The translations under genes were made by a program, and so were the position numbers. Under the pieces are notes generated by a model that searched no databases, was not told the DNA's origin, and saw only the letters and a list, made by a program, of their open reading frames with translations. Of a stretch of DNA of 64,000 nucleotides, positions 27,701 through 62,435 are shown piece by piece; the first letter of the stretch is position 1, and each line of letters starts with the position of its first letter. Source of the DNA: Glycera tridactyla (Eukaryota); NCBI GenBank assembly GCA_965644265.1, contig OZ286467.1, forward strand, positions 55,862,001-55,926,000, given 5' to 3'.

Positions 27701-30700
27701 CAGCATGGGGAAAAAACACCTGCCAGGTATGTATCAAATAAACCTGCCCCATATAAATTCAGCCTTCCCCATCATACGACCATTGCAATTTTTCCCACCT
27801 GTTCTTAAAACAGATGAATTGATAATCAACCTGTCTAGCTGTCTGTGAGTGGTGCCAGAAGGAAACATTGTCATGAAACCCAATAATCTTGGACCATCCA
27901 GCCATGAAAAGTGAGATGATATGAACATCACAGGCACTTGAAATGTCATTTCAGAAATGAGCAACAGGGAAAGATTGACCTCACCTTCAGGAGGAGAATG
28001 AAGGCAACATTCTCAGCTCGGGTCAATAGCTTCACCAGACCCTCTGCTTTGGCATTGTAATGGGAGGCATCCTGCAGACAATGTACGATAGGCGCAAATG
28101 CACGAATGCACCAATCGATGGCTCGTTTCATGTGCCCCATCCACCTGGTTCCGCCAACTCTGGGGGGCATGAGGGGTGTCTTTCCAAGCATCTCGAATGT
28201 TTTTCGGAGAAGTCTCCTCTGCTTGCTGCTCCTCTTGAAGAAATAATACAAGCCGACTAAGAGGGTCAGCACCTGGTCGTACAGCTTGGGCGCAGCCTTT
28301 TTGATGGCATCCTTGTACCCGAGTTCCAGTCTGTGTGCTAAACAATGAATGACAATCAAAGCTGGGTGGCGCTCTTGCAAGAGTGCTGCAAGTCCTTTCT
28401 TGCGGCCAAGCATGTTGGAGGCACCATCACAGCTGAAGCCAACAAACTTGTCCATGTAACCGTCAAGACCAGCCTGATGTAAAGTGCTGCATACCACTTC
28501 GAAGAGTGCTGCTGATTCAGTTGAGTCTGGCTCAACAATCTTCAGGAACTTTGTTTCAGCCTCCCCCTTTGTGACAAAACGCACAAATAGCGTCTCTTGC
28601 TCTGTGCTACTGATATCCGTTGCTCCATCCATGGTGAGGCTGAAGTAGCTGCAGTGCTGAATACAGTCATTAAGATGCGATGTCTCCACCTCAGCAATCG
28701 AGTCAATGAATAAGCCACCTGAATGGGGATTCCGGTACGTACATCCCACATCCAACCCTTTCGCCTCATCCAGGTCTGCCAGCCATTCCACGTCTTTGAT
28801 CGGCCGATTCTTCTTGGCTATGGCATGGGCATTTCGAAAGAGAATTTGGAGTCGCGACCTCTCATTCTCCTTCAGCTGAATCAAGGCCTTCCCTGCAGCA
28901 GAGGCGGATGCTCCCACATTACTTGAAGACTGCTGTGCCCTTGCGACTGCTGCAATCTTCTGGTGGGCCTTTGACATCTCATGATCAGTGATGGCTGACT
29001 TCTTAAAGTTGTTGGTCCCCTCAATGAAGCTGCCCTCTTTCTGCATAACCTTCAGGCGACTGTCAGTGGCCAGCTCCTTAAGGTCGCAACAGAATTTGCA
29101 GAACATGAGGTTCTTCGCACAATCATGGATCAGCCAATCTCTTCCGACTTGCCAGCTGCTCTGTGAAAAAAAAGGAGAGATGGTCAGCATATGCATCTCA
29201 GAAGCATCTATTCTGGCACATCCAGCCTGGTTCCTGCAATTTCTGAATTTCCATTTTCGCTAAATTTTCAGAAAATTGGCGTCACTGACCCACTCAACAC
29301 CACCCACACGTGGGCTAATGGTTGCCCTACTAGCATCGGGCAGGTAATTTTATCAGTCTGCTATGAATCTTCATGCTGGGTGTGTGTGTAAGGGGGGGGG
29401 GGGTGAATATGATACTTCACCTGAAGACAGCTAAAGAAAAAAGCTAATTTTTAGAGAAATTCATGCTTATTCCAAATGAAAACTAGAACTGTAATCCAGA
29501 GGATGACTAACAGGTGGGGGACTGGCCTGTTATTTCAGTACGTCCTGTGATCAGGGGATGGTGGGTGTACTGTAATCACAGGATGTACTGGGATTCCAGT
29601 ACACTCTGCAGTGCTGAGTGGGTTTTGGGTAAATAACCAAGTGTGTTCATAATTTCTCTTTTATTGTGATTTTCATCATCTGTACAGTACTGACATGACA
29701 ACACTGTATTTTCTGGTTCAGGGAAGTCCAAAATTGTCGCAGTTGTGTCAGGTGGTACAGAATTACATACCATAGTAGCATAGGTACATTTCTCATGATT
29801 TTTCATCACATGTTTGAGATGTTTCTCCATTTACAGCATAATTGTTCCAGAAACCGTAAAATCAAATAGTCTCAATAAAAAGAGGATGATGTCCAAAGGT
29901 AGGTTGTAGCTTGTAGTTTTGAAATAGATCTATTGAGGGATGGGTTAATTCATTTTTTTCACCTTTGTGTCGAATGCGGTCGGTCAAGAACCATCGAATA
30001 CATGATTCATCAAATTGTGTGTGTGTGTGTGGGGGGGGGGGGGAAGGTTGATGGTTCAAATCCAATACAAGCCAAAAAATAATTTGGAACACATTTCATG
30101 GACCTGTTGCCAGTACAAGCTGGGAATATGTCTCTGACATGATTTCTATCACTAAAAAAATGTGTGTGTGTATGTGTGTGTGTGTGTGTGTGTGCGCGCG
30201 CATAATCCTCTATGTTGATACATGCATTTAACATCAACCAATCATCACATGTTTGAGATGTTTCTCCATTTACAGCATAATTGTTCCAGAAACCGTAAAA
30301 TCAAATAGTCTCAATAAAAAGAGGATGATGTCCAAAGGTAGGTCGTAGCTTGTAGTTTTGAAATAGATCTATTGAGGGATGTGGGACTCAACCAGGAAGT
30401 TACTTTTGCGTCCATCAGGGTTTCATTTACCCCTGCGTCCTGCGTCATACACGAATCAAATCACATCCGGGACCCATCATACTGCCAATCCACCTACCTA
30501 CCCACCTACCCACCCACCTATCCACTCACCTGCCCATCCACCATTCTACCCACCCATCCACCCACCACTCTACCCACATACCCATCCACCTACCCACCAC
30601 TCTACCCACCCACCCACATACCCAAGCACCTACCAACCCACCCACACGTGGGTGGGTGGGTAGGTGGATGGTTAGATGAGTGTGTAGGTGGGTGGGTGGG

Positions 30701-33700
30701 TGGTTAGGTGAGTGAGTGGGTGAGGTGAGTGGGTGGGTGGGTGGGGTGGTGAGTGGGTGGGTGGTTGAGTGGGTCATTGAGGTGAGTGGGTGGGGCAGTG
30801 AGTGGGTGAGGTGAGTGGGCAGGTGGGTTGGTGAGTGAGTGGGTGGGTGGGCAGGTGGGTGTGGTGAGTGGGCAGGTGGTTGTGGTGAGTGGGTGGGTCA
30901 GTGAGGTGAGTGGGTGGGGCAGTGAGTGGGTGAGTGGGTGGGTGGGGGGGGGTGAGTGGGCAGGTGGGTGTGGTGAGTGGGCAGGTGGTTGTGGTGAGTG
31001 GGTGGGTCAGTGAGGTGAGTGGGTGGGGCAGTGAGTGGGTGAGGTGAGTGGGGGGGTGGTGAGTGAGTGGGTGGGTGGGGGGGTGAGTGGGTGGGTGAGG
31101 TGAGTGGGTGGGTGGGTCAGTGAGGTGAGTGGGTGGGTGGGCAGGTGAGTGAGTCAGTGAGGTGAGTGGGCTGGTGGGTGAGTGGATGGGTGGTTGAGTG
31201 GGTCATTGAGGTGAGTGGGTGGGGCAGTGAGTGGGTGAGGTGAGTGGGCAGGTGGGTTGGTGAGTGAGTGGGTGGGTGAGGTGGGTTGGTGAGTGAGTGG
31301 GTGGGTGGGCAGGTGGGTGTGGTGAGTGAGTGGGTGGGTGAGTGGGCAGGTGGTTGTGGTGGGTGGGTGGGTCAGTGAGGTGAGTGGGTGGGGCAGTGAG
31401 TGGGCAGGTGGGTTGGTGAGTGAGTGGGTGGGTGAGGTGGGTTGGTGAGTGGGTGGGTCAGTGAGGTGAGTGGGTGGGTGGGCAGGTGAGTGAGTCAGTG
31501 AGGTGAGTGGGCAGGTTGGTGTGGTGGGTGAGTGGATGGGTGGTTGAGTGGGTCATTGAGGTGAGTGGGTGGGGCAGTGAGTGGGTGAGGTGAGTGGGCA
31601 GGTGGGTTGGTGAGTGAGTGGGTGGGTGAGGTGGGTTGGTGAGTGAGTGGGTGGGTGGGCAGGTGGGTGTGGTGAGTGAGTGGGTGGGTGAGTGGGCAGG
31701 TGGTTGTGGTGGGTGGGTGGGTCAGTGAGGTGAGTGGGTGGGGCAGTGAGTGGGCAGGTGGGTTGGTGAGTGAGTGGGTGGGTGAGGTGGGTTGGTGAGT
31801 GGGTGGGTCAGTGAGGTGAGTGGGTGGGTGGGCAGGTGAGTGAGTCAGTGAGGTGAGTGGGCAGGTTGGTGTGGTGGGTGAGTGGATGGGTGGTTGAGTG
31901 GGTCATTGAGGTGAGTGGGTGGGGCAGTGAGTGGGTGAGGTGAGTGGGCAGGTGGGTTGGTGAGTGAGTGGGTGGGTGGGCAGGTGGGTGTGGTGAGTGG
32001 GCAGGTGGTTGTGGTGAGTGGGTGGGTCAGTGAGGTGAGTGGGTGGGGCAGTGAGTGGGTGAGTGGGTGGGTGGGGGGGTGAGTGGGTGGGTGAGGTGAG
32101 TGGGCGGGTGGGTGGGGTGAGTGGGCAGGTGGGTGTGGTGAGTGGGTGGGTCAGTGAGGTGAGTGGGTGGGGCAGTGAGTGGGTGAGGTGAGTGGGGGGG
32201 TGGTGAGTGAGTGGGTGGGTGGGGGGTGAGTGGGTGGGTGAGGTGAGTGGGTGGGTGGGTCAGTGAGGTGAGTGGGTGGGTGGGCAGGTGAGTGAGTCAG
32301 TGAGGTGAGTGGGCTGGTGGGTGAGTGGATGGGTGGTTGAGTGGGTCATTGAGGTGAGTGGGTGGGGCAGTGAGTGGGTGAGGTGAGTGGGCAGGTGGGT
32401 TGGTGAGTGAGTGGGTGGGTGAGGTGGGTTGGTGAGTGAGTGGGTGGGTGGGCAGGTGGGTGTGGTGAGTGAGTGGGTGGGTGAGTGGGCAGGTGGTTGT
32501 GGTGGGTGGGTGGGTCAGTGAGGTGAGTGGGTGGGGCAGTGAGTGGGCAGGTGGGTTGGTGAGTGAGTGGGTGGGTGAGGTGGGTTGGTGAGTGAGTGGG
32601 TGGGTGGGCAGGTGGGTGTGGTGAGTGAGTGGGTGGGTGAGTGGGCAGGTGGTTGTGGTGGGTGGGTGGGTCAGTGAGGTGAGTGGGTGGGTGGGCAGGT
32701 GAGTGAGTCAGTGAGGTGAGTGGGCTGGTGGGTGAGTGGATGGGTGGTTGAGTGGGTCAGTGAGGTGAGTGGGTGGGGCAGTGAGTGGGTGAGGTGAGTG
32801 GGCAGGTGGGTTGGTGAGTGAGTGGGTGGGTGAGGTGGGTTGGTGAGTGAGTGGGTGGGTGGGCAGGTGGGTGTGGTGAGTGAGTGGGTGGGTGAGTGGG
32901 CAGGTGGTTGTGGTGGGTGGGTGGGTCAGTGAGGTGAGTGGGTGGGGCAGTGAGTGGGCAGGTGGGTTGGTGAGTGAGTGGGTGGGTGAGGTGGGTTGGT
33001 GAGTGGGTGGGTCAGTGAGGTGAGTGGGTGGGTGGGCAGGTGAGTGAGTCATTGAGGTGAGTGGGCAGGTGGGTGTGGTGGGTGAGTGGATGGGTGGTTG
33101 AGTGGGTCATTGAGGTGAGTGGGTGGGGCAGTGAGTGGGTGAGGTGAGTGGGCAGGTGGGTTGGTGAGTGAGTGGGTGGGTGAGGTGGGTTGGTGAGTGA
33201 GTGGGTGGGTGGGCAGGTGGTTGTGGTGAGTGGGGCGGTGAGTGGGTGGGTGGGCGAGTGAGTGGGTGGGTGAGGTGGGTGGGGCAGTGAGTTGGTAGGG
33301 TGGGTGGGTGGGTGAGGTGAGCGAGTGGGAGGATGGGTGAGTGGGTGGGCAGGTGAGTGAGTGAGTGATGGTCGGCGTGGTCATGATCTTGGTCACTCAC
33401 GAAACCTGCAGTGATCTTGGTCACTGCAGGTAGATCAGGGCGAGAAGACATCCTGAAAATCCACCTGCCCCCCCTGGAAAATCCACCTGCCCTGCTTATA
33501 TATGTAAGTCATTTATGTTCATTCTCCACCTGCCCACCTGAAAAATCTACCTGCCCCGGGCAGGTGGGCGGCTATCTCTTCTCGCCCTGTAGATGGGTGT
33601 GGATTTGTGGTAGCTGTGGTAGCCAGCTGTTAGCCCCTGTTCCCTTCCCCCCCCCCCCCAATCACCCACCAACCCACCCACCCCCACATGTTAATTTTGA

Positions 33701-33953
33701 TGCACTTGCATTGAAAATCAGCGAATACACAGAATAATAACACAAAAAAAGCTACCTGAAATTTTCTGATTGTTGGCTTCTTTCTCTCCTGGTTGCCCGT
33801 TGATTCATCCAGTCTTCCCTTTTTCATCTCCTGGCTACTTGGTGATGCTTCCAGTTGTCTCTTTGCTTCCCTGCTGGGGCCAGGCACTGGTGATTGTGGC
33901 TCTGAGGCTGGCTTCCCAGGCCTTGGAGTTCTCTTGACAAACTTGTCCATCAT
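24732..33953 (-). CDS. hAT-family transposase (ZNF862/DUF4371-like), 7 exons, 795 aa predicted
   Basis: Exons 33953-33756, 29160-27985, 27617-27499, 27136-26919, 26261-26144, 25858-25585 and 25016-24732; all introns GT-AG with compatible phases (0,0,2,1,2,0); 2388 nt with no internal stop found. Motifs: TTF-like zinc finger (RKFQ|SSW..FCKFC..DHEMSKAH), TMDGATD, SCDGASNM, HCLAHRLEL, and dimerisation domain LPPTSVVNEMAFS. Confidence 0.88.
26478..26603 (+). mobile_element. Internally deleted family A copy in transposase intron 4
   Basis: GACCAGTGAACTGATCCC..CAGTGGCC joined to GCCCATGTCCATTGCATGG..GGAGCTGAC-TGACATTAA. Confidence 0.7.
26604..26783. mobile_element. hAT-type MITE inserted in the family A tail, ~5-bp TSD
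   Basis: CAGGGCTTTA / TAGAGCCCTG; flanks TTAAG / TTAAA; GGCAGGT repeats; related remnant at 29311-29352. Confidence 0.7.
27365..27460 (-). mobile_element. Partial reversed copy of the 17362/33436 MITE in intron 3
   Basis: CAGGTGGGCAGGTAG..AAATGACTTGCATACATAAGCAGG is the reverse complement of the MITE core. Confidence 0.7.
29804..30381. repeat. 139-bp direct duplication (29804-29942 and 30243-30381)
   Basis: Near-identical, with one T/C difference seen; the spacer contains (GT)n and poly-G runs. Confidence 0.9.
30481..33368. repeat. GGGT/GAGT-rich satellite in transposase intron 1, with a short inverted C-rich arm and ~350-bp higher-order period
   Basis: C-rich at 30481-30644, CACGTG at 30645-30650, G-rich thereafter; marker GGATGGGTGGTTGAGTGGGTCA at 31184, 31534, 31884, 32327, 32738 and 33088. 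Confidence 0.95.
33436..33589. mobile_element. hAT-type MITE with 5-bp TSD TAGAT (hAT5-like)
   Basis: Perfect TIR CAGGGCGAGAAG / CTTCTCGCCCTG; TAGAT at 33431-33435 and 33590-33594. Confidence 0.9.
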
Positions 33954-34059
33954 CAAAGTTCTCCCCTCCAAACCGCTGATCAGTGACAATCACTGGCTAT
34001 AATTGAGTCACTGATTCATGGGATCGTTCACTGATGATTAGATGATTTCCTCACTTCTG

Positions 34060-34500
34060 TGAAAACACACGAAAGAGCGCGAAACCGCCGGTTTTTGTAA
34101 GCGCCACCTCTCGTAACGTGACGAATTTGCCGATTACCACGTTCCACTAGTCCCGGTTTTTATTCTTCATTGTATACAAGAAATACGACCGTCAAAACAA
34201 TTCGGGATTAGGGTAAATCGAATTTGTAACACGCACGCTGATTGGTCAATATTTCGTATATCCGGTTTTCTCGGCCAATCAGAATCGAGGAGACATTCGG
34301 TGTCGGCTTCATGCCAGAACAAAATGGCGGCGCGCAGTCGATCGTATCAACGCGAAATAAATTGTTTTCGCTGTCGGATTTCGCCACAAATGGCATGGAT
34401 TTTTCGCCCGAACGTGACGCCGGACATCGTGTCAGACGTGAAAGTAAGCCACGCCGGTCAATTTATCAAAACGACGGATTTGTCCGACGGTCCGACGTGT
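34060..34500. promoter_or_regulatory. CpG-rich candidate promoter of the transposase
   Basis: Directly upstream of exon 1; ATTGG at 34241-34245, CCAAT at 34275-34279, YY1-like AAAATGGCGG at 34321-34330. Confidence 0.5.
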
Positions 34501-34514
34501 TTTCGCAAACACTG

Positions 34515-34745
34515 CTAGTGGAAGCCATGTTAGTCAATCCCATGTTCACGGGGTAACACTATGGTCAACATTTTTACCAACAGGAATGACACCCGGAGTG
34601 TCTGTGAATTCCATAATATTTCACCTTCTATTGGGACCCAGAAGGATGTGTCTTAGATGATCCCACCCATGGCTCATTGCATGGGCATCACAATATAGCA
34701 CAAATGGAGCTGACGTGACGTTACAACAGGACCAACCAACCAACA
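34515..34745 (+). mobile_element. 3' part of the family A copy split by the hAT transposon
   Basis: CTAGTGGAAGCCATG..AATGACACC..GCATGGGCATCACAATATAGC..GTGACGTTA plus CAAC tail. Confidence 0.85.
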
Positions 34746-34799
34746 GTCATCACCAAAACCGCCACCAAGTGCTGCGCTTTGCAAAAAAAAACATTGCTA

Positions 34800-34941
34800 T
34801 CAGGCTTGAGTGTCTTTATAGGCAGGTGGTCTTCATAGAGAGGTCATTTACTGTGGAAAATACTACCGCGGTCGCAGCTCAGGGTGGTCTTTATAGAGAG
34901 GTGGTCCATATAGAGAGGTGGTCTTTAGAGCAGTTTCAACC
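34800..34941 (-). mobile_element. Tc1/mariner-type MITE (GACCACC family), reversed
   Basis: AGGTGGTCTTTA repeats and AGAGGTCATTTACTGT-GAAAATACTACC; ends CAGTTTCAACCG+TA. Confidence 0.7.
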
Positions 34942-34984
34942 GTAGTTGGATATGCCATCATTAGATTCAGTTTGTCCATGAAGT

Positions 34985-35160
34985 ATGGAGAGTCACACTT
35001 GCTCCGAAAAGCACACCTTCAGTGTCTGTGAATATTTCATGAGTTTCTTTAGATTGCATAAAGTCTTGAATGATCCCGACCATATTCATTGGATGGGCGT
35101 TTCAGTATATCACAGTTGCTGATCACGGGACGTGAGACAGTCAACCATCAAACCGATCAT
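34985..35160 (+). mobile_element. Family A copy (degenerate)
   Basis: CACCTTCAGTGTCTGTGAAT..GTCTTGAATGATCCC..GGATGGGCGT. Confidence 0.55.
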
Positions 35161-35244
35161 CTCACCATCTTGTGGAATTTACATACGAATGTGACATAAT
35201 ATCTGGATAGGATTCGGATGAGGAAGAAGCTGAAGGAATATATT

Positions 35245-35343
35245 GGGTTTGCTGACTTATTTCATAGAGCTTCCAGAGGGTTTGCTGACTTATTTCATAG
35301 AGCTTCCAGAGGGTTTGCTGACTTATTTCATAGAGCTTCCAGA
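35245..35343. repeat. Three perfect 33-bp tandem repeats
   Basis: GGGTTTGCTGACTTATTTCATAGAGCTTCCAGA x3. Confidence 0.95.
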
Positions 35344-35555
35344 GAGACTGAGGCTCATGTCGGATATTATTTGTGCCAAGTATGTACTCTGACTGCCATC
35401 TGACTCTATGTTATTTTCATATTTCTAGTTATTATAGTTTGAATAATAGGAGTGATAATCATCTTCCAACAAAGTTTTAATTCAAGATAGATGGTTTTGG
35501 TACAGTTATTGCAGTATTCCTTTGCTTAATGTACATGGACATCAAATTGTCGATA

Positions 35556-35745
35556 GCAGAAATGACACCTTGAGTTCTGTGCATTCCATAAATATTCGCC
35601 CTCTGTTGAGAACCCAGAAGGAGGTGTCTCGAATTACCCCACTCATGCCCATTGCATGGGCGTCATTTTCTAGCACAAATGGAGCTGACGTGACCTTAAA
35701 TCCGAACCAACAATCCAAGCAACCAACCTACCAACCAACCAACCG
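35556..35745 (+). mobile_element. Family A copy
   Basis: CAGAAATGACACCTTGAG..CCCATTGCATGGGCGTC..GTGACCTTAAA plus CAAC tail. Confidence 0.8.
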
Positions 35746-36284
35746 ATCAAATTGTCGATTGGTGGCCCAGGTGGGAATTTCACTCTCACGATGTGTGGTT
35801 GGATTCCATTTAATAGAATAATAGGTTAAGGTTACAACGTCTCCATAGTTCGGCGGGGAGTTGCCCTCGCATTTCACGGAGAAATACACAGCAGGTCAAA
35901 ATCGGAGTCACGTGGATTAAGCGTATAAAGAAGCAAGATGCAGTGGAAGTTCAAGAGTGTCTCCATGGTTAAATTCCGCCCCACTGAACAAGATGATCAT
36001 GCAATGGCAGGTGGGCGACCCCGGCCCTAGTATTGGTTGCGATAACGTGATATGTTGTGGTTCAACGTCTGATATCCACAGCAAGTTCATTCAGCTTCAC
36101 AATGACATTCCTTCGCAGGCCTGTTCCAGCTAGAGCATTTCTCCCAACCACAGGCAAAGAGTTGACTGCATGGGCTAAGCACTCTACAATTACCATCACT
36201 GCCTAGTCAAATACCCATCTACACCTGGGTGATTTCTACTCAATGAGAAGCACAATTCATATAGATAGATCTGCCTAATGGTGT

Positions 36285-36496
36285 AACCCAGTGCATGCCG
36301 ACTGGGATATCAAAGGCCGGCCGTGTAAATAGGAGTCTTTTCCTGTGCGGACGTAAAAGAACCACTGCTGTCTTTTGCAAAGAGTAGGGACGGCCCCCGG
36401 CATGCGGTGACTCTTTTCTTCAGCATTTTTAGGGATTTCTGAGTCCGATATAACCCAAGTGGGTTTAAGCGACGTTATCTCAAACAAACAAACAAA
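36285..36496 (+). mobile_element. Free-standing ~210-bp retroposed element B (LINE 3' UTR / Deu-Nin-like core)
   Basis: Starts AACCCAGTGCATGCCGACTGGG, ends (CAAA)n; TSD CTGCCTAAT(G/A)GTG at 36271-36283 and 36497-36509. Confidence 0.85.
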
Positions 36497-37403
36497 CTGC
36501 CTAATAGTGCCGGTCCAGTATGGAATGGTGAACATTGCTCATCTGGGACATGCATCTGAGGAGGAGCCCTGGACAATATTGTGAACAATGTTACTCAGTT
36601 GAGACCCCCCCCCCCCCAGGTTTGTCTAATGGGCGTTAACACCTACCTTTCAATGTCTTCAGTGGGATTGAAGTCAACGTAATGTGACAATGCTCAAATA
36701 CCAATGCCAATTCTATTCTAGTATGCTTATATTAGTTGTAAAATTCTCGCTTCTCTGCCTAACAATTCAAGTATGTGTTTGTTTTGCAAGAATCTGTAAA
36801 TCAGATGCTTATAGTATGTCTCACTATAAGTGAGGTGCTTCATGTTTGTATAATGTCATGACTGGAGGAGGAGGGATGATACACTCTCCTAATAAAAGTT
36901 CTGATGAATGAGGCCTCAGAAGCAATTTAAAGCATTCGTTGTGGCCTTTGACACCTTTGGAAGCCTTCGATAATCAAAGATGTCGCCGAAGATAGCCTTG
37001 CGTTGATCGTTGAAGCAACTCAACATGAATAATGCTGTTTTGCAGTGGTTCGGTGCCCGGTGGAATGTAACAAAGACATGGGTCGAGAAGCACATAATGT
37101 GCCTTTCTACGCACTAGTCTTCATAATAACGACATCATTAGTACACACAGTCGATCTTAGAAAAGGCGCCCGAGGTACATCGGGAAGCAGGCAAAAGTCT
37201 CTTCAATGATAGGATTCACAAAGCTTTAACAAAACTTTTTTATATGGTGTCCAGATCCAAATGCATGTTTATGTTTGAGATGTGCTTGAGATAGTGTCAA
37301 TACTGATGTATGACATTTTCAATAAAAGCGATTGGAAATTATGATTGATAATTGATTGATATAGAGAGTAATGTTTTCAAGTGTAATTCATTTGTGGTGA
37401 GAA

Positions 37404-42965: not shown

Positions 42966-43958
42966 CCATGTTATATAGAGATGTCAAAGCCCTACTTCCG
43001 ATAGATATTTTTGTCAAACCCAAATGTCAGGTATTCATATCTGACTTCCAAAAATGTAGTCGCGCAGCCATCTTGGAAATTTCTAGATAGTGAAAGTGTT
43101 TTCCCGGGCCTAGTCGTCATCCAAATAAAACGGCACATGGTAACAGTAATAATTTAATGGTGAATTTTATGATCGACCATAAGAATCGGTGGCTCATTTA
43201 ATGAATAAAATACTCGTATGATACTGATGGAGAGGTTGGTATTTCAGACACAAATTATCAAAGTCTACGGCAATCTCACTGTTTGAATAGCATGATGTTC
43301 TGGGGCAGTTCATAAACATTCGCGAATTCATGATAGAATCTTCACTTCCACCTAGCAATAACAAATTTACTTCACCAGCAGAAATAATACACTGACAGAT
43401 ACAATACATACATTTTACATGATCCACCATTCATTAAACACCCATTATGTCAAATATATCTCAATATACTAAGAAAATGACCCATGGGTCCAATAAATGA
43501 CATTCAGTGAAATAGATTATAAATGAATTTATATGAATACAGAATAATTTAGGATGATAGAACATGGTTGTTGGGATCTGGTGAGGATGGGAACATGGAA
43601 AGAAGAAAAGAATAAAGATATGAATGGACCGAAATCAGCCATAAACACCTGCAATATTAATGATGTGATCAGTTGTTCTGCGCTTATGCCACTATAGTCG
43701 GGTCGACGATTTTCCCATGTCAGATTATTTCATGTATCTCTCCTATATTCAGTGCATTCATCTCCAAGTAGCATTGAGGTTGGTGAGACTGAATTGCCTA
43801 CCTGAAACGAAAAATTAAATCCTTTAATGATAAGTTAGACAATTGTGAATCGTATGCATACGACGAGGGTATTAAAGGTCCATCGTGTGTATAGGGGTCT
43901 CTTCCTGTATGCATGTAAACCAGTCGTTGGTGTCCCTCACAAGAAGTAAAGAACTGTC

Positions 43959-45134
43959 CAAGAAAATCCCGATGTCATTGCTCCTCTCGGAATAAGATTC
44001 GGAATCATATACATCTGGCCCAGTCAACAAAGGAGACCACCAACCCATCACTATACAAAAGTAGATACCTAGAGATTAGGTCACATTATAGTGATCATGA
44101 GGCCATCTTCACCGATGGATCCAAATGTGAGAGCAAAGCATCAGCAGCTGCTTATACAGAATCACAAACCTATTACTGCAGGCTACCTGATTGGTCAACA
44201 GTGTTTTCAGCTGAAGTGAGTGCTTTACTTATGGCTTTCAAATACATATCAAGATCGGAAAAACAAAAGTTCATAATTTTCACAGACTCCCTGTCTTCTC
44301 TGCAGGCCTTTCAGGAAAATCTCAGGAACTGTATACTCTTGCAAATCTTAGAAGAGTATCAAATAATCAAAGATCATCAAAAGACTCTCAGACTTTGCTG
44401 GATTCCAAGACATATTGGAAATCCTGAAAATGAGGCAGCTGATAAAGCGGCCAAAAGAGCTCTAGGTTTACCAGTCACTGAGATGGAAATCCACTATTCC
44501 GACTTCAAGCCAAGAATAAAGCTCTATATTGACCAACTCTGGCAGAATGAATGGGGAACCAAAAAGCAAAATAGATTATATTGCATCAGTCCAAAACTGG
44601 AGGACAGATTTCCTGTGAGAACTATGAATAGAAGAGAGGAGATAGTACTTTCCCATCTGAGGATAGGACATACATATCTCACACATTCACACCTCCTGAA
44701 AAAAAACGAGGCAATCCTAATTGCTTTGCATGCGGATGCCATCTCACAGTCGAACATTTATTGCTCAACTGTAGAAAACTATTGCAAACTAGAGTAAAGT
44801 ATTACAGTGTTGAAAATATCGCACAACTTTTCATGAAAGTCGATCCAACGGACATACATGTATTCGATTATTTGCATGAATTGTGAGTATTTAGACAAAT
44901 ATGAATCGTATGCATGCTAACCCAGTGCATGCCGACTGGGATATCAAAGGCCGGCCATGTATATACGAACCTTTTCCTGTACCCATGTTAAAGATCCACT
45001 GCTGTCTTTCGCAAAGAGTAGGGATAGCCCCCGGCAGGCAGTGACTCTTTTCTTCAGCATTTTCAGTTTTTTTTTCAGTCCAATATAACCCAAGCGGGTT
45101 TAAGTGATGTTAAACTCAAACAAACAAACAAACA
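43959..45134 (+). mobile_element. 5'-truncated copy of the Nimb/I-group LINE (RNase H, CCHC remnant, 3' UTR element B)
   Basis: Colinear with about 51489-52742 with a small internal deletion; ORF 44201-44797 contains FTDSLSSLQA and WIPRHIGNPENEAAD. Confidence 0.9.
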
Positions 45135-52500: not shown

Positions 52501-52742
52501 TATTTAGACAAATATGAATCGTGTGCATGCTAACCCAGTGCATGCTGACTGGGATATCAAAGGCCGGCCGTGTATTTAGGAGCCTTTTCCTTTACGCACG
52601 TTAAAGATCCACTGCTGTCTTTTGCAAAGAGTAGGGACGGCCCCCGGCATGCAGTGACTCTTTTTCTTCAGCATTTTCAGTTTTTCAGTCCGATATAACC
52701 CAAGCAGGTTTAAGTGACGTTAAACTAAAGCAATCAAACAAA
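49567..52742 (+). mobile_element. 5'-truncated I-group (Nimb-like) LINE with TSD
   Basis: TSD CCTCCACAAAA at 49556-49566 and 52743-52753; ends GTGACGTTAAAC plus CAAA-like tail; encodes RT, RNase H and CCHC. Confidence 0.92.
49582..52517 (+). pseudogene. LINE ORF2 (RT, RNase H, zinc knuckle), disabled
   Basis: YRPIALTSC upstream, QSGFR, FFDMEKAYD, GVPQGSILS, LYVDD; FTDGSK, DSLSSLQAL, WIPSHIGIPGNEAAD; CFACGCHLTVKHLLLDC. Lesions: TGA at 50269, frameshift near 50970, TAG at 51249. Confidence 0.92.
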
Positions 52743-53184: not shown

Positions 53185-53625
53185 AAGCACACACATACCC
53201 ACGCCCATACCCACGCACACACCCACGTATACACACACGAACGCACACAAACTCACCCACACTCACACACGCGTGATTCAGAGGGACTGCATGCCACTAC
53301 TCAGATAGCATTTATTCGGTTTGAAATCTTAACCATACAGAAGAAATGGGTCTAACTGAAATTCCACCGTTTGTTTCTGATCTGTCGAATCCAAATATGA
53401 CTGATGCGTTTCCCATTCTCCTCCCGGCAATCCAGGCTCGATTGAAGTGAAACTCACTGACAGGCTTTGTTGACATGTCTGGCGAAAAGAAATCTGATCA
53501 AGATGATACAAAAATATGTTGATTTCACGCAGTCCCCATAGTGACAGCGTTGAATGACCTCCATGATTGTACTGAACTATTTTCCGGGGAATTTCAAGCA
53601 TTTTCACCTTCCGTTTTATACCCAG

Positions 53626-54327
53626 TTTGTTTGTTTGTTTGACCTAACGTCACTTAAAGCCGCTTGGGTGTAATCGGACTGGAAAAACTGAAAATGCTGA
53701 AGAAAAGAGTCACTGCCTTTTGGGGGCCGTCCCTACTCTTTGTGAAAGACAGCAGTGGATCTTTGATGTGCGTAAAGGAAATAGCTCCTGAATACACAGC
53801 CGGCATTTGATATCCCAGTTGGCATGCACTGAGTTAGCATGCACACAATTCATATTTGTCTAAATATTCCCAATTCATGCAAATAATCAAATACGTCTGT
53901 TGGATTGACTCATGGAAAGTTGGGTCATATTTTCAACAGTGTAATACTTCACTCTAGTCTGTGATAGTTTTCTACAGTCGAGCAATAAATGTTTGACTGT
54001 GAGATGGCATCCGCATGCAAAGCAGTTAGGATGGCCTTGTTTTTTCAGAAGGTGTGAATGTGTGAGATATGTATGTCCTATCCTCAGACGGGAAAGTACT
54101 ATCTCCTCTCTTCTATTCATAGTTCTCACAGGGAATCCGTTCTCAAGTTTTGGTCTGATGCGATGTAATTTTTTTTGCTTTTTGGTTCCCCATTCATTCT
54201 GCCGGAATTGGTCAATATAGAGCTTTATTCTTGATTTGAAGTCTGAATAATGGATTTCCATCTCAGTGACTGGCAAACCTAGAGCCCTTTTGGCCGCTTT
54301 ATCCGCTGCCTCATTTCCAGGAATTCA
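53626..54327 (-). mobile_element. Inverted 5'-truncated copy of the same LINE (3' 700 bp)
   Basis: Reverse complement of ~52040-52742; ORF 53887-54276 with CFACGCHLTVKHLLLDC; element B at the 3' end. Confidence 0.9.
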
Positions 54328-54822: not shown

Positions 54823-55033
54823 AACCCCCAGTGCATGCTGACTGGGATATTAAAGGCCGGCCATGTATTTGGGAGCCTTTCTTTACGCACGTTAAAGATC
54901 CACTGCTGTCTTTCGCAAAGAGTAGGGATGGCCCCCGGCAGGCAGTGACTCTTTTCTTCAGAGTTTTCAGTTTTTTTCAGTCCGATATAACCCAAGCGGG
55001 TTTAAGTGACGTTAAACTCAAACAAACAAACAA
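54823..55033 (+). mobile_element. Free-standing element B
   Basis: Starts AACCCCCAGTGCATGCTGACTGGG; TSD CTGCCACTG at 54814-54822 and 55034-55042. Confidence 0.88.
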
Positions 55034-55109: not shown

Positions 55110-55400
55110 TAGAAATTAGTTAACTGATCCCATGTTCACTGCGTAACACAGTGGCAAAAATGAACTGACCCAGTGGAAGCCATGTGGATCAATCCCATGT
55201 TCACAGGGTAACACTGTGGTCAACAGTTTTGATAAGAGGAGTGACACCTTGAGCCTCTGTGAATCTCATAAATGTTCGCCTTCTGTTGGGGGGCCCAGAA
55301 GGAGGAGTCTTGAATGATCCCACTTGTAGCCATTGCATGGGCGTCACAACATAGCACAAATGGAGCTGACGCGACTTTAAAACAGAATCAACTAACCAAC
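55110..55400 (+). mobile_element. Family A copy (long form)
   Basis: AACTGATCCCATGTTCACTGCGTAACACAGTGG through GCATGGGCGTCACAAC-TAGC and CAAC tail. Confidence 0.85.
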
Positions 55401-55694
55401 CGTATGCATGTTGAAGAACCACCGTTATCCTGGCAAGGAGTAGGGTATTTCCCCCGATAGTCGTGCCTCATTTCCTCAGACTTTCCAGTTTTTCTGATAT
55501 AACCCATGGTTGAAAGGACGTTAAGACCAAACAAACAAGCATACAAACAAGCAAACGGAAAAGAAGCCAGTATATAGATAATCTGCCCATCTCTACTACC
55601 AAATTGTCTTGAATGACACCCATAGCAATTCATCATATTAAGGCTCAGAGACTGAAATAGTGTGGGTTCATGCAATAATTCTGCCTGTCCACAA

Positions 55695-59832: not shown

Positions 59833-60709
59833 CTCATCTCAGGTGTCTATGGATATATGAAAGACATCTTCCAGAAAGGACACAACAGATCGATTCTGTG
59901 ACTGATTTGTAGCTAACGAGTTGCGTGCTATTACTCCCCATTTGCACACCCATTTAAAAGGTTCATTGGCATTCACAATGTCGTGTGCACAGAAAAAGCC
60001 TACATCTTTGATCGTGAGTTATGAAGGTGGAGCCATGCTAGCTTTGATCTTGTAAGGCTATCTAATGAAAATATGTGCGCTGAAAAAAGTGCCACAAGAG
60101 TATAGACATTGTTCAACTCCGATGAAATCGGAACAACCATGATTTGTTCTAGATTATTAAAGGAATTTTCCCCATGTCCACATCATAATATTGAGTCCCC
60201 ATTCATTCATTTGAATTATTCAACAGCAACTGACATGTCAATTGAGGAGAATAACAATCGTGAAATGGATGTATCGTGATCTCAAACGAGAAAGAACAGT
60301 CCATTCAAACCATCTCAGGTATGTCATTGGATTGAATGCCATGAAATACAATTTATCATTCATAATGACTTACCATCTAACTGACTATAGACGGCCAAAA
60401 CACATTTAGATACTTGATTTGAAGAGGAGCTGATGGATGATTAGATTTGCTTCAGGATAATTTAGGGCAACCTTTCGAGCTCTTTTAGCTGATGCCTGAT
60501 TGTAATGCACACACCACTTGAAATCCAATACGGTGGGAAGTTCTTGTTGCTGTGCCAAAGCAAAATCCCTCTACTTGTCAATCAGTTGCATGAGAGAAGA
60601 AATACATTTGACACCTTCGAGGGTCTGTGAATTTCATAACTTTCCACCTTTTTGCTGAGAGCTCAGATGTCTTGATGCCATCCATTTCTTCGGCGTCTCA
60701 ATGTAGTCC

Positions 60710-60927
60710 AACCCAGTGCATGCCGACCGGGATATCAAAGGCTGGCCGTGTACGTAGAAGTCTGTTCCTGTATGCACGTGAAAGAAACATATGCACTGCC
60801 GTCTCTCGCATAGAGTAGGGACGGCCCCCGCCAGCGGTGCCGCTTTTCTTCAGCATTTTCAGTTTTTCAGTCCCATATAACCCGAGGTGATTAAAAGGAC
60901 CTTAAACCCAAGCAAACAATCAACACA
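60710..60927 (+). mobile_element. Free-standing element B inserted into a decayed family A copy
   Basis: Starts (AA)CCCAGTGCATGCCGACCGGG; TSD CTCAATG(T/C)AGTCCAA at 60697-60711 and 60928-60942. Confidence 0.82.
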
Positions 60928-62194
60928 CTCAATGCAGTCCAAATAACGTACGAGAGACGTAAAACAAGCGACCAACCAAGTGCTCCAAATAAACATGTGA
61001 TTATTTCTATTGGCTGTAGGAGCCATCCGTGATTGGTGGATAGACGTCTGAGCATTCATGGGGGACACTGCATTCAACGAGACAGATGGAGATGTAAGTA
61101 GCTGGACACTGAGGTTGGGAGTGAGTTATGGAGCCTACATTCAAATTAAGACAGATATGGCGGTAGTCAGACCAACATTGAAAGATTGATGCATAAGTAG
61201 GCCCACTGGTGCTACTTTGAACACACAAATCACAATGTAGAGAATAAATGGTACACGAAGCCTGAAATGAATTAAATTGTCGTTTACTAATTAAATAAAG
61301 GGCAGATATCTGTGGATCGGAAGTGCTTTCTCTAATCCTATGACTCAGATCTCTTTCAACGGCTATGCAATATAGCCGAGGTGGTGTTGACGAGAGGGAA
61401 ATCGCCAAGCAACTCACGACCCGACCATCCCAATCACATGGCTAATATATAACCCCAAACATCCATTCCACTTTCACCTGCAGCATCTTTCACACCATTT
61501 ACAGACACAGACACAGTTGGACACAAGAACAATGAGAAAAACAAATGTGAGGAAATTTTCATTGTGGTGTCAAATGGCTCATTTCATAGATTATATTGAT
61601 TCTTGTCCCAAATCAGAGATGACACCTCGAGTATTTCATGATTACTCTCTATTCTATTTTCATCCATGTATTATTGCAATGGTTACTTCCACTTGTAATT
61701 GGGTCGGAAAGTACTATTGTAGTCCATTGCCTGAGATGGATTTCATATGCAGGCGACTCTTGTCCGGACCTGGACTTTTGACCAGGGATGAACACATTCT
61801 TCTCGGCGCATTGCTCAATGGCATTTATTCAAAATTCGCTATTTCGTGGAGAAATGTTGAATGATCCCCTCACTTGCCCATTACATTTCTGTCTCAATAT
61901 AAAAGCTCAGCCGGTGCTCATGAGATCGTAAACAGTCAACCAGCTAATCAACAAGCCAATGATACCTGTCTCATTGGCCAGTATACCGAAAGATTGGACT
62001 GCCGTGGAAAGAATTATGCCGTGTTCCTGACATTTGGGAGCTGGATTCTTTGTCCCATGCAGGCACCACTCTCACACACTCTAAACTTTAGATGATGGGA
62101 ACCATTGAGGTTGTCAAATGGAAGTAGCTGCTGTCAAGTGGAAGTAGCTGCTGTTCGCACAAATAATGGTATTTCTGAATATGTGTCAGCTCAC

Positions 62195-62435
62195 AAATTG
62201 CTCCGCATTGGGTGCCATCTCACAGGTTGGGATGTATTGCTTGATTGTAGAAAACTATCACCCATTATAGAAAAGTATCACAGTGGAAGTTGATTCAATA
62301 TACATTTTGATCATTTGCATGAATAATGGGCATTTAAGCAAATATGAATTGTATGCATGCTCACCCAGTGCACAGCGACTGGGAGATCAAACGTCGGCCA
62401 TGTGAATGGGGGTCTATTACTGTATGCATGCCCCC
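62195..62435 (+). mobile_element. Old fragment of the same LINE 3' end, including the ORF-to-element-B junction
   Basis: GCHLT..LLDCRKLS; AAATATGAATTGTATGCATGCTCACCCAGTGCACAGCGACTGGG. Confidence 0.75.

What the first reader, a model, noticed from the sequence alone, without database searches (positions are those of the whole stretch)
36286..36470. Predicted pseudoknotted multi-helix RNA fold in element B
Seen in the 36285 copy: hairpin CCCAGU/ACUGGG with an 8-nt loop GCAUGCCG that is exactly complementary to the downstream CGGCAUGC (pseudoknot). Helix GGCCGU/ACGGCC encloses hairpins AGGA/UCCU and CUGCU-CUUU/AAAG-AGUAG and leaves the conserved CGUUAAAGAUCC unpaired. GACU(C)/(G)AGUC follows the pseudoknot strand, and AUAUC/GAUAU could close the domain. 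The 54823 copy has GGCCAU/AUGGCC, a compensatory pair that CpG decay could also explain. The hairpin-loop pseudoknot is reminiscent of pistol/HDV-type ribozymes, but I could not fit it to a known consensus.
Basis: partly seen in the sequence, partly recalled or inferred. Interest (0 to 1): 0.7.

Follow-up and report, generated by a model that had tools for sequence, protein, structure and literature searches.

The report
LINE tail RNA: hairpins, no pseudoknot
This stretch is the untranslated tail of a jumping gene (a LINE), often copied alone; related elements confirm three or four simple hairpins of the kind such tails use to be recognised for copying, but not the proposed pseudoknot or any ribozyme-like fold.

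Summary
Window 36284-36496 is a target-site-duplicated, tail-only copy of the 3' UTR plus (CAAA)n tail of an I/Nimb-like LINE (RT + RNase H). ORF2 stops at 52515-52517, 17 nt before the first hairpin.

As a whole, though, the fold is no more stable than shuffles (z -0.18). Their nested model scores -33 against an MFE of -58 kcal/mol.

Compared with two sister LINE families from metagenome contigs and with SINE-like repeats:
- **H1:** supported, with CG to UA changes at two pairs.
- **H3:** real, but it is the tip of a long hairpin closed by CGUGU/GCACG.
- **H4:** a hairpin lies here, but its register is unresolved.
- **H5 and H6:** their 3' arms lie in or beside a conserved two-tier terminal stem-loop next to GACGUUAAAC.
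- **Pseudoknot:** 8/8 only in a minority subfamily. The family consensus has a mismatch and family C has no partner.
- **Ribozymes:** Rfam gives no hit.

Most likely this is an ordinary modular LINE 3' UTR used for reverse-transcriptase recognition. The fixed 5' end of the tail-only copies remains unexplained. This scan had already noted the same element and its fixed 5' end elsewhere in this genome.

The parts
36284..36496 (+). Tail-only ('headless') copy of the LINE 3' UTR plus (CAAA)n tail. Flanked by target-site duplications at 36271-36283 and 36497-36509 (12 of 13 bases identical).
   Evidence: Sequence read; aligned with five other copies; matches the UTR that follows the LINE ORF2 stop at 52515-52517.
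36287..36306 (+). H1: 6-bp hairpin CCCAGU/ACUGGG with an 8-nt loop, at the very 5' end of the tail-only copies.
   Evidence: RNAalifold recovers it from an unbiased alignment. Pair count: 93.9% paired, CG to UA at two pairs in three family-C sequences. Stable against shuffles.
36322..36353 (+). Hairpin II: long imperfect hairpin.
   Evidence: Local MFE hairpin in every copy and family. Covariance model R1 finds it in all LINE copies and in SINE-like repeats. 83.6% paired, 8 of 11 pairs changed on both sides, 0/500 shuffles.
36351..36365 (+). Conserved single-stranded motif ACGUWAAAGAWCCAC between hairpin II and the next hairpin.
   Evidence: Nearly invariant across families A, B and C and the SINE-like repeats.
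36362..36397 (+). Hairpin region III. The register is unresolved.
Evidence: Competing register: 83.8% paired, 1/500 and 9/500 shuffles. GGG/CCC with loops of 4-6 nt that differ between lineages.
36398..36405 (+). CGGCAUGC, the proposed 3' strand of the pseudoknot. Not supported as such.
   Evidence: 8/8 only here, and in the 52531 copy with one G-U. At the equivalent place 52650, 86-96% of contig depth in four runs reads G, which gives a mismatch. Family C has no partner.
36441..36473 (+). Two-tier terminal stem-loop: outer stem GUCC/G(U)GAC and inner hairpin AACCC/GGGUU (36452-36456/36461-36465). The 3' arm of H6 lies in its internal loop.
   Evidence: Found by unconstrained folding in 12 of 14 sequences from families with otherwise unrelated UTRs. 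83.5% paired, UA to AU and CG to GC changes, slid controls 7-54%.
36471..36496 (+). GACGUUAU (family consensus GACGUUAAAC) followed by the (CAAA)n tail.
   Evidence: The motif precedes the tail in all related LINE families fetched and in seven other retroposon ends in the window.
52518..52742 (+). The same UTR in place, behind the ORF2 (RT + RNase H) of a long LINE copy. H1 starts 17 nt after the stop codon.
   Evidence: ORFs; Pfam RVT_1 and RNase_H; alignment.
44918..45131 (+). UTR of a second, 5'-truncated LINE copy.
53620..53836 (-). UTR of a third, 5'-truncated LINE copy.
54824..55033 (+). Tail-only copy with TSD CTGCCACTG. Starts AACC+CC+CAGUG, with two extra C.
60709..60928 (+). Older tail-only copy (78% identical) with a 15-nt TSD.
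43835..43919 (+). Diverged partial copy in which hairpin II is perfectly paired for 12-14 bp.
55396..55535 (+). 5'-truncated copy of a sister family. Carries UCCU/AGGA where family A has UCUUU/AAAGA.
62330..62432 (+). Diverged LINE end, interrupted after hairpin II. The H1 stem is kept but the loop differs (GCACAGCG).

Best explanation
The stretch is the 3' untranslated region of an I/Nimb-like non-LTR retrotransposon (LINE), retroposed here on its own. Its RNA is best described as a row of local, independently folding modules. These are a 5' hairpin (H1), a long hairpin II, a conserved single-stranded ACGUWAAAGAWCCAC motif, a third hairpin region of uncertain register, a U-rich spacer, and a two-tier terminal stem-loop followed by GACGUUAAAC and the (CAAA)n tail. 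It is not a pseudoknotted, closed multi-helix domain. Shown here: the position behind ORF2, the tail and target-site duplications, and conservation with compensatory changes in H1, hairpin II and the terminal stem-loop. Inferred from what is known of stringent-type LINEs such as eel UnaL2 and CR1/L2 partners of SINEs: the terminal stem-loop and GACGUUAAAC motif are the site that the element's own reverse transcriptase recognises to start target-primed reverse transcription. That would explain why UTR-only RNAs and other repeats with the same tail are mobilised. The upstream modules probably bind element or host proteins or stabilise the RNA. Their roles are not shown.
For: It lies directly behind an ORF with RVT_1 and RNase_H domains. 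There are six copies in 64 kb, three with target-site duplications. H1 covaries. Hairpin II is present in families A, B and C and in SINE-like repeats, with 8 of 11 pairs changed on both sides and 0/500 shuffles. The terminal stem-loop is conserved even in relatives whose UTRs are otherwise unrelated (L001, L002, L003, L030), with UA to AU and CG to GC changes. GACGTTAA precedes the tail at seven other retroposon ends in the window. No Rfam family matches. The whole element is no more stable than shuffles, while the local hairpins are.
Against: Few independent lineages were available: three LINE families plus a handful of SINE-like repeats. Each covariation signal therefore rests on one to three evolutionary events, and many changes within family A are CpG transitions. 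The hairpin II count was made on an alignment fitted to the model. RT recognition is inferred, not tested. A 5-bp contact between the H1 loop (UGCCG) and CGGCA is invariant in families A and B, so a weak tertiary contact is not excluded. A modular RT-recognition tail does not by itself explain the sharp fixed 5' end of the tail-only copies.
Confidence: 0.7

Rival explanations
1. One reading: one closed domain (AUAUC/GAUAU) containing GGCCGU/ACGGCC, AGGA/UCCU, the CUGCU hairpin and GACU/AGUC, locked by a hairpin-loop pseudoknot, possibly a self-cleaving ribozyme that sets the 5' end.
For: All helices are present in the 36285 copy, and 0/1000 loop shuffles reach 8 Watson-Crick pairs. There is a compensatory A-U in H2 in the 54823 copy. 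Tail-only copies start within a few bases of H1. The loop and CGGCA are invariant in families A and B.
Against: In family B, H2 has 4/6 pairs with central mismatches, H5 2/5 and H6 3/5. In family C, H2 has 2/6, and the H2 3' arm and the pseudoknot partner are absent. The family A consensus has G, not U, in the pseudoknot strand. Hairpin II and the terminal stem-loop, which do covary, use the same bases as H2 and H5. The model scores -33 against an MFE of -58 kcal/mol. No HDV-like, pistol, hatchet, twister or hammerhead match at E up to 10. The 5' ends fall in two clusters 4 nt apart rather than at one bond.
Confidence: 0.06
2. H1, perhaps with a short loop contact downstream, is a 5'-end-defining element. 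Either it stalls a 5'-3' exonuclease (xrRNA-like), or it marks a processing site or internal start. Either way the LINE mRNA gives rise to a stable UTR-only RNA that is then retroposed.
For: Contig depth steps up 4- to 20-fold at 52524-52540. Many contigs in organisms B and C and in a sediment metagenome have unrelated flanks beginning at 52531/2 or 52535/6. Three of six window copies start there with TSDs. H1 and its 15-17 nt distance from the stop codon are conserved in families A, B and C. No tRNA-like head is found.
Against: A plain 6-bp hairpin is not known to stop Xrn1. The loop contact is absent in family C and imperfect in the A consensus. No xrRNA family of Rfam matches. No RNA run with raw reads was available, so no RNA 5' end was seen. 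Contig depth is a poor measure of copy number.
Confidence: 0.12
3. There is no selected RNA structure. The copies are alike because they are young, the blocks shared between families are conserved as protein-binding sequence, and the hairpins are incidental.
For: The whole-element z-score is -0.18. Changes within family A are mostly CpG decay, which gives apparent compensation by chance (reasoning). The 3' half of hairpin region III is invariant while its 5' partner varies.
Against: Families with only 57-65% protein identity keep H1, hairpin II and the terminal stem-loop through changes on both sides that are not CpG transitions: CC/GG to UU/AA, C-G to G-C, U-A to A-U. Slid controls drop to 7-64% pairing.
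Confidence: 0.1

Closest known systems
3' UTR stem-loops of stringent-type LINEs recognised by their own reverse transcriptase (eel UnaL2; CR1/L2 partners of SINEs; Kajikawa and Okada 2002 as cited in PMC4824008)
   Same: A conserved stem-loop lies directly before a short tandem-repeat tail. It is shared between a LINE and non-autonomous repeats and carries compensatory changes. PMC4824008 reports the same logic for bivalve SINE tails and CR1 elements.
   Different: The clade differs (I/Nimb-like, with RNase H). The stem-loop is two-tiered and followed by GACGUUAAAC. Recognition by the RT was not tested here.
Vhc stem-loop of the V-domain of mollusc, arthropod and sea-anemone SINEs (Matetovici et al. 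2016, PMC4758252)
   Same: A roughly 40-nt highly conserved block inside retroposons forms a stable hairpin with an internal loop and is followed by unpaired nucleotides. Internal T runs are followed by C, as in this UTR.
   Different: I could not compare sequences, because neither the figures nor the supplements are held. Whether the block here is the V, Meta, Nin-DC or Deu domain therefore stays open. Here the block sits in a LINE 3' UTR.
HDV-like self-cleaving ribozymes of retrotransposons (R2, L1Tc/ingi 5' ends; mentioned in PMC4758252)
   Same: An RNA structure at a fixed 5' end of a retroposed RNA.
   Different: These lie in the 5' UTR and have a nested double pseudoknot (P1, P1.1, P2, P3, P4). 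Here a plain hairpin comes first, there is no Rfam match, and the proposed pseudoknot is not conserved.
Pistol ribozyme
   Same: A hairpin whose loop pairs with a downstream strand, in the 36285 copy.
   Different: Pistol is about 50 nt with the partner strand close by and cleaves near its 3' part. Here the partner is about 95 nt away and mismatched in the consensus, and there is no Rfam match.
Exoribonuclease-resistant RNAs (xrRNAs) of flaviviruses and plant viruses
   Same: A discrete 5' end a few bases upstream of a structured 3' UTR element, with possible loop-to-downstream pairing.
   Different: No match to the Rfam xrRNA models, no three-way junction or ring shown, no RNA data.

Membership tests
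3' UTR of an I/Nimb-like non-LTR retrotransposon | Lies directly downstream of an ORF2 encoding reverse transcriptase (and RNase H in this clade) | tested here: met
   ORF2 stops at 52515-52517 and the same sequence follows in three long copies. Pfam RVT_1 E 6.9e-25 and RNase_H E 1.1e-11. Assignment to the I/Nimb clade rests on domain content and on earlier notes, not on a tree.
3' UTR of an I/Nimb-like non-LTR retrotransposon | Ends in a simple-repeat tail and is flanked by variable target-site duplications | tested here: met
   (CAAA)n tails and TSDs of 9-15 nt at three copies.
3' UTR of an I/Nimb-like non-LTR retrotransposon | Conserved 3'-terminal structure or motif shared with related LINEs | tested here: met
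   Two-tier stem-loop plus GACGUUAA in families A, B and C and in L001, L002, L003 and L030.
3' UTR of an I/Nimb-like non-LTR retrotransposon | Bound by the element's reverse transcriptase to prime reverse transcription | not testable with these tools
   Needs binding or retrotransposition assays.
HDV-like ribozyme | Nested double-pseudoknot fold; match to the Rfam HDV-type models | tested here: not met
   No match at gathering score or at E up to 10 on either strand. The first element is a plain hairpin, not a P1 strand that pairs after a P3 hairpin.
HDV-like ribozyme | Self-cleavage at the 5' edge of the fold | not testable with these tools
   The 5' ends of copies cluster at 52531/2 and 52535/6. 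That is compatible with, but no evidence for, cleavage.
Pistol ribozyme | Conserved hairpin-loop pseudoknot and conserved core nucleotides; Rfam model match | tested here: not met
   No Rfam match. The pseudoknot is 8/8 in one copy (8/8 with a G-U in a second), mismatched in the consensus and absent in family C.
SINE highly conserved domain (V / Meta / Nin-DC / Deu) | Sequence identity to the named consensus domain | tested here: inconclusive
   A block ACGUWAAAGAWCCAC...CGCAAAGAGUAGGG-loop-CCCC is shared with SINE-like repeats on metagenome contigs L012, L016, L019 and L020. No published consensus sequence was available to compare.
Exoribonuclease-resistant RNA | Ring-forming pseudoknotted fold that halts Xrn1 just upstream | tested here: inconclusive
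   A fixed 5' end is seen. No Rfam xrRNA match. The loop contact is not conserved in family C. Resistance itself is not testable here.

The most novel reading that the evidence does not exclude
The conserved hairpin H1, 15-17 nt behind the ORF2 stop codon, is part of a 5'-end-defining RNA element. It could be an exonuclease-stalling, xrRNA-like structure or a processing signal. It would turn decaying LINE mRNA into a stable UTR-only RNA, which the LINE then retroposes in large numbers: a SINE-like parasite made without a Pol III head.
Probability: 0.1. Interest if true: 0.8.

Novelty: new member of a known kind. Interest (0 to 1): 0.3.

Why it matters
LINE 3' UTR structures decide which RNAs a LINE copies, and so which SINEs can spread. 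Here the real, conserved modules of one invertebrate LINE family are separated from chance complementarity. One module, hairpin II with the ACGUWAAAGAWCCAC motif, recurs in SINE-like repeats of other animals. That bears on the unexplained origin of conserved SINE cores. The proposed ribozyme or pseudoknot would have been remarkable, but it is not supported. The fixed 5' end of the tail-only copies is the part still worth an experiment.

Tried and rejected
- **Rfam:** the whole window at gathering score, and the UTRs of families A, B and C at E up to 10 or 5. Only chance-level matches appeared (Pox_AX, DUF805b, PK-BYV).
- **ARAGORN:** no tRNA-like head.
- **Collection scans for more copies.** Viral contigs gave six chance matches. 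The metagenome scan gave 10 loci, of which four or five are SINE-like relatives. The genome-contig scan gave four chance matches.
- **Closest protein relatives** P0001 and P0003 (55% identity), and also P0054, P0122 and P0008. Their UTRs are unrelated apart from the terminal module.
- **RNAalifold on MAFFT alignments** of hairpin II and of the terminal module. It predicted nothing, because hairpin lengths differ and the arms were misaligned. I replaced it with a covariance model and a length-matched subset.
- **Naming the SINE domain from papers.** Sequence words were not found, and the supplements are not held.
- **An upstream hairpin over the stop codon** as an RT block. It is neither stable nor conserved.
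- **Sequencing runs.** Only assembled contigs were available, so RNA 5' ends and strandedness could not be read.
- **Pair count of the long-range helices.** I did not run the pair-count tool on the 231-column alignment, to avoid typing a long structure string. Those counts were made by script instead.
- **A long-range helix GCCGG/CCGGC** that could close the central modules. It is invariant in families A and B and absent in C, so it cannot be tested.

Full report
**What the stretch is.** The motif at 36287 occurs six times in the window: at 36287, 44921, 52534, 53833 (minus strand), 54827 and 60712. Three of these copies continue upstream into a LINE body. The longest copy has ORFs with RVT_1 and RNase_H domains, and its ORF2 stops at 52515-52517. 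'Element B' is therefore the 3' UTR of an I/Nimb-like LINE, about 225 nt plus a (CAAA)n tail.

The other three copies (36284, 54824, 60709) carry target-site duplications. They begin within a few bases of the same point, 15-17 nt after the stop codon, at the foot of the first hairpin. Diverged partial copies lie at 43835-43919, 55396-55535 and 62330-62432.

**The observation.** The whole fold is nevertheless not special.
- Rfam has no match in the window at gathering score.
- Rfam has no ribozyme-like match in the UTR at E up to 10, nor in the sister families at E up to 5.
- No tRNA-like head is present.

**Related sequences.** The ORF2 C-terminus has hundreds of relatives in metagenome and genome assemblies. 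Some were filed under bivalve-symbiont bins, which points to marine invertebrate hosts. Other agents of this scan guess that the animal is an annelid; I did not test that.

Most relatives, including the closest full-length ones at 55% identity, have unrelated UTRs. All they share is a terminal module before the tail. Two sister families do have a homologous UTR:
- **Family B:** L004, L031 and L033, 60-65% protein identity.
- **Family C:** L025, L026 and L032, 57-58% protein identity.

A pattern scan of metagenome contigs also found SINE-like repeats that share the central block (L012, L016, L019, L020).

**Helix by helix.**

*H1* is supported. RNAalifold recovers it from an unbiased alignment. 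Across twelve sequences, 93.9% of cells pair, and two pairs change from C-G to U-A in all three family-C sequences. No shuffle in 500 reaches the observed covariation score, and slid registers fall to 20-50% pairing.

*H3* is real, but it is only the tip of a long hairpin. The outer stem CGUGU/GCACG closes it in every copy and family:
- 10-12 bp in families B and C
- 12-14 bp in the partial copy at 43884
- two internal mismatches in the family A consensus

A covariance model of this hairpin plus the motif behind it finds all LINE copies and the SINE-like repeats L019 and L020. On the resulting alignment 83.6% of cells pair, and 8 of 11 pairs change on both sides. No shuffle in 500 reaches the observed score or percentage paired. 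That alignment is fitted to the model and holds two or three doubtful hits.

H2 itself fails outside family A. Its 3' arm ACGGCC reads AGUUCC in family B (4/6 pairs with central mismatches), and in family C it has no counterpart. The 'compensatory' A-U pairs within family A are CpG transitions on both arms. By the same arithmetic, CpG decay produces apparent compensation for both H2 and hairpin II, so changes within the family decide nothing.

*H4* is unresolved. On an alignment of families A and B and the SINE-like repeats it pairs in 79.8% of cells. That is indistinguishable from shuffles (141/500) and close to the slid registers (62-67%). A competing register, GCUGUCUUU with AGGGACGGC, pairs in 83.8% of cells. 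Only 1 of 500 shuffles reaches that percentage and 9 of 500 reach its covariation score, and the register is clearly specific. It again consumes the H2 3' arm. Family C has a different 7-bp hairpin at this place. A GGG-loop-CCC element with variable 4-6 nt loops is a third option. Some hairpin sits here, but its register is open.

*H5 and H6* are not supported. In family B they pair at 2/5 and 3/5, and in family C at 1-3 of 5. Their 3' arms, AGUC and GAUAU, lie in or beside a two-tier terminal stem-loop. Its outer stem reads GUCC/GGAC, GUCU/AGAC, GACGC/GCGUC or GACAC/GUGUC in different lineages. Its inner hairpin reads AACCC/GGGUU or AAUCG/CGGUU.

It pairs in 83.5% of cells with U-A to A-U and C-G to G-C changes. 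Three of 500 shuffles reach its covariation score, and slid controls give 7-54% pairing.

*The pseudoknot* is exact only in the 36285 copy, and in the 52531 copy with one G-U. I laid contigs from four public runs on the UTR: three coded organisms and a marine sediment metagenome. At 52650, 86-96% of the depth reads G rather than T. The family consensus is therefore CGGCAGGC, which gives five pairs, a mismatch and two more pairs. Family C loops (GCUGCCC, GCUGCGA, GCUGUCC) have no downstream complement. UGCCG and CGGCA are invariant in families A and B, so a weak contact cannot be excluded. The same CCGGC could equally pair with GCCGG in front of hairpin II.

**The fixed 5' end.** The same lay of contigs shows depth rising 4- to 20-fold at 52524-52540. 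Many contigs have unrelated left flanks that begin at 52531/2 or 52535/6, in organisms B and C and in the sediment sample. Tail-only copies with a nearly fixed 5' end are therefore the dominant form, beyond this window as well.

Contig depth is only a rough guide, and no raw RNA reads were available. The cause is open. It could be an internal start, processing, exonuclease stalling, or a founder effect. The two clusters of ends and the lack of any ribozyme match argue against precise self-cleavage, but they do not exclude it.

**Conclusion.** The RNA is most likely a modular LINE 3' UTR. Its terminal stem-loop and GACGUUAAAC motif probably serve recognition by the element's reverse transcriptase, by analogy with stringent-type LINEs; this is inferred, not tested. 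The upstream modules (H1, hairpin II with its motif, hairpin III) are conserved for reasons not yet known.

The covariation evidence rests on few lineages and should be repeated genome-wide.

Earlier notes of this scan had already seen the same element, its fixed 5' end and its likeness to SINE cores elsewhere in this genome.

Noticed in passing
window 13621, 18855, 19319, 19953, 45199, 46305 (+) and 42235 (-): Seven other retroposon 3' ends carry GACGTTAA followed by CAAA/CCAA-type tails, mostly preceded by GCTGAYGT. Several non-autonomous families seem to share this LINE clade's tail signal.
   Followed up: no
window 52598-52606 and 52716-52724 (equivalents 36351-36359 and 36471-36478): The motif ACGUUAAA occurs twice in the UTR, each time directly after a stem-loop (hairpin II and the terminal stem-loop). 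The SINE-like repeat L019 has a third, similar GGCGUUAAACC upstream. The central module may be an internal copy of the terminal recognition module.
   Followed up: partly
window 52518-52533; L031 434-449; L025 1058-1072: The 15-17 nt spacer between the stop codon and H1 (AUCGNNNGCAUG...) is conserved in families A, B and C, although tail-only copies lack it. It contains UGCAUG, which recurs in the H1 loop of families A and B.
   Followed up: no
window 43835-43919: An old partial copy in which H1 is largely lost but hairpin II is perfectly paired for 12-14 bp. Positions that are mismatched in the family A consensus are paired here.
   Followed up: partly
window 28001-36000: GC content rises to 52% and GC skew to +0.34 to +0.36, against about 41% and about 0 elsewhere.
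   Followed up: no
window 36340-36345, 36414-36417, 36426-36430 and equivalents: In the family consensus, all runs of four or more T inside the UTR are followed by C. PMC4758252 noted the same pattern for Vhc and Snail SINEs as weakening Pol III termination. T runs alone therefore do not rule out Pol III transcription.
   Followed up: no
L012, L016, L019, L020 (metagenome contigs): SINE-like repeats from other hosts share the block ACGUWAAAGAWCCAC...CGCAAAGAGUAGGG-loop-CCCC and have their own covarying hairpin directly in front of it, for example GUCUCUCGA/UCGAGGGAC in L019.
   Followed up: partly
Also GCUGGC (60741-60746) is perfectly complementary to GCCAGC downstream.
   Followed up: partly
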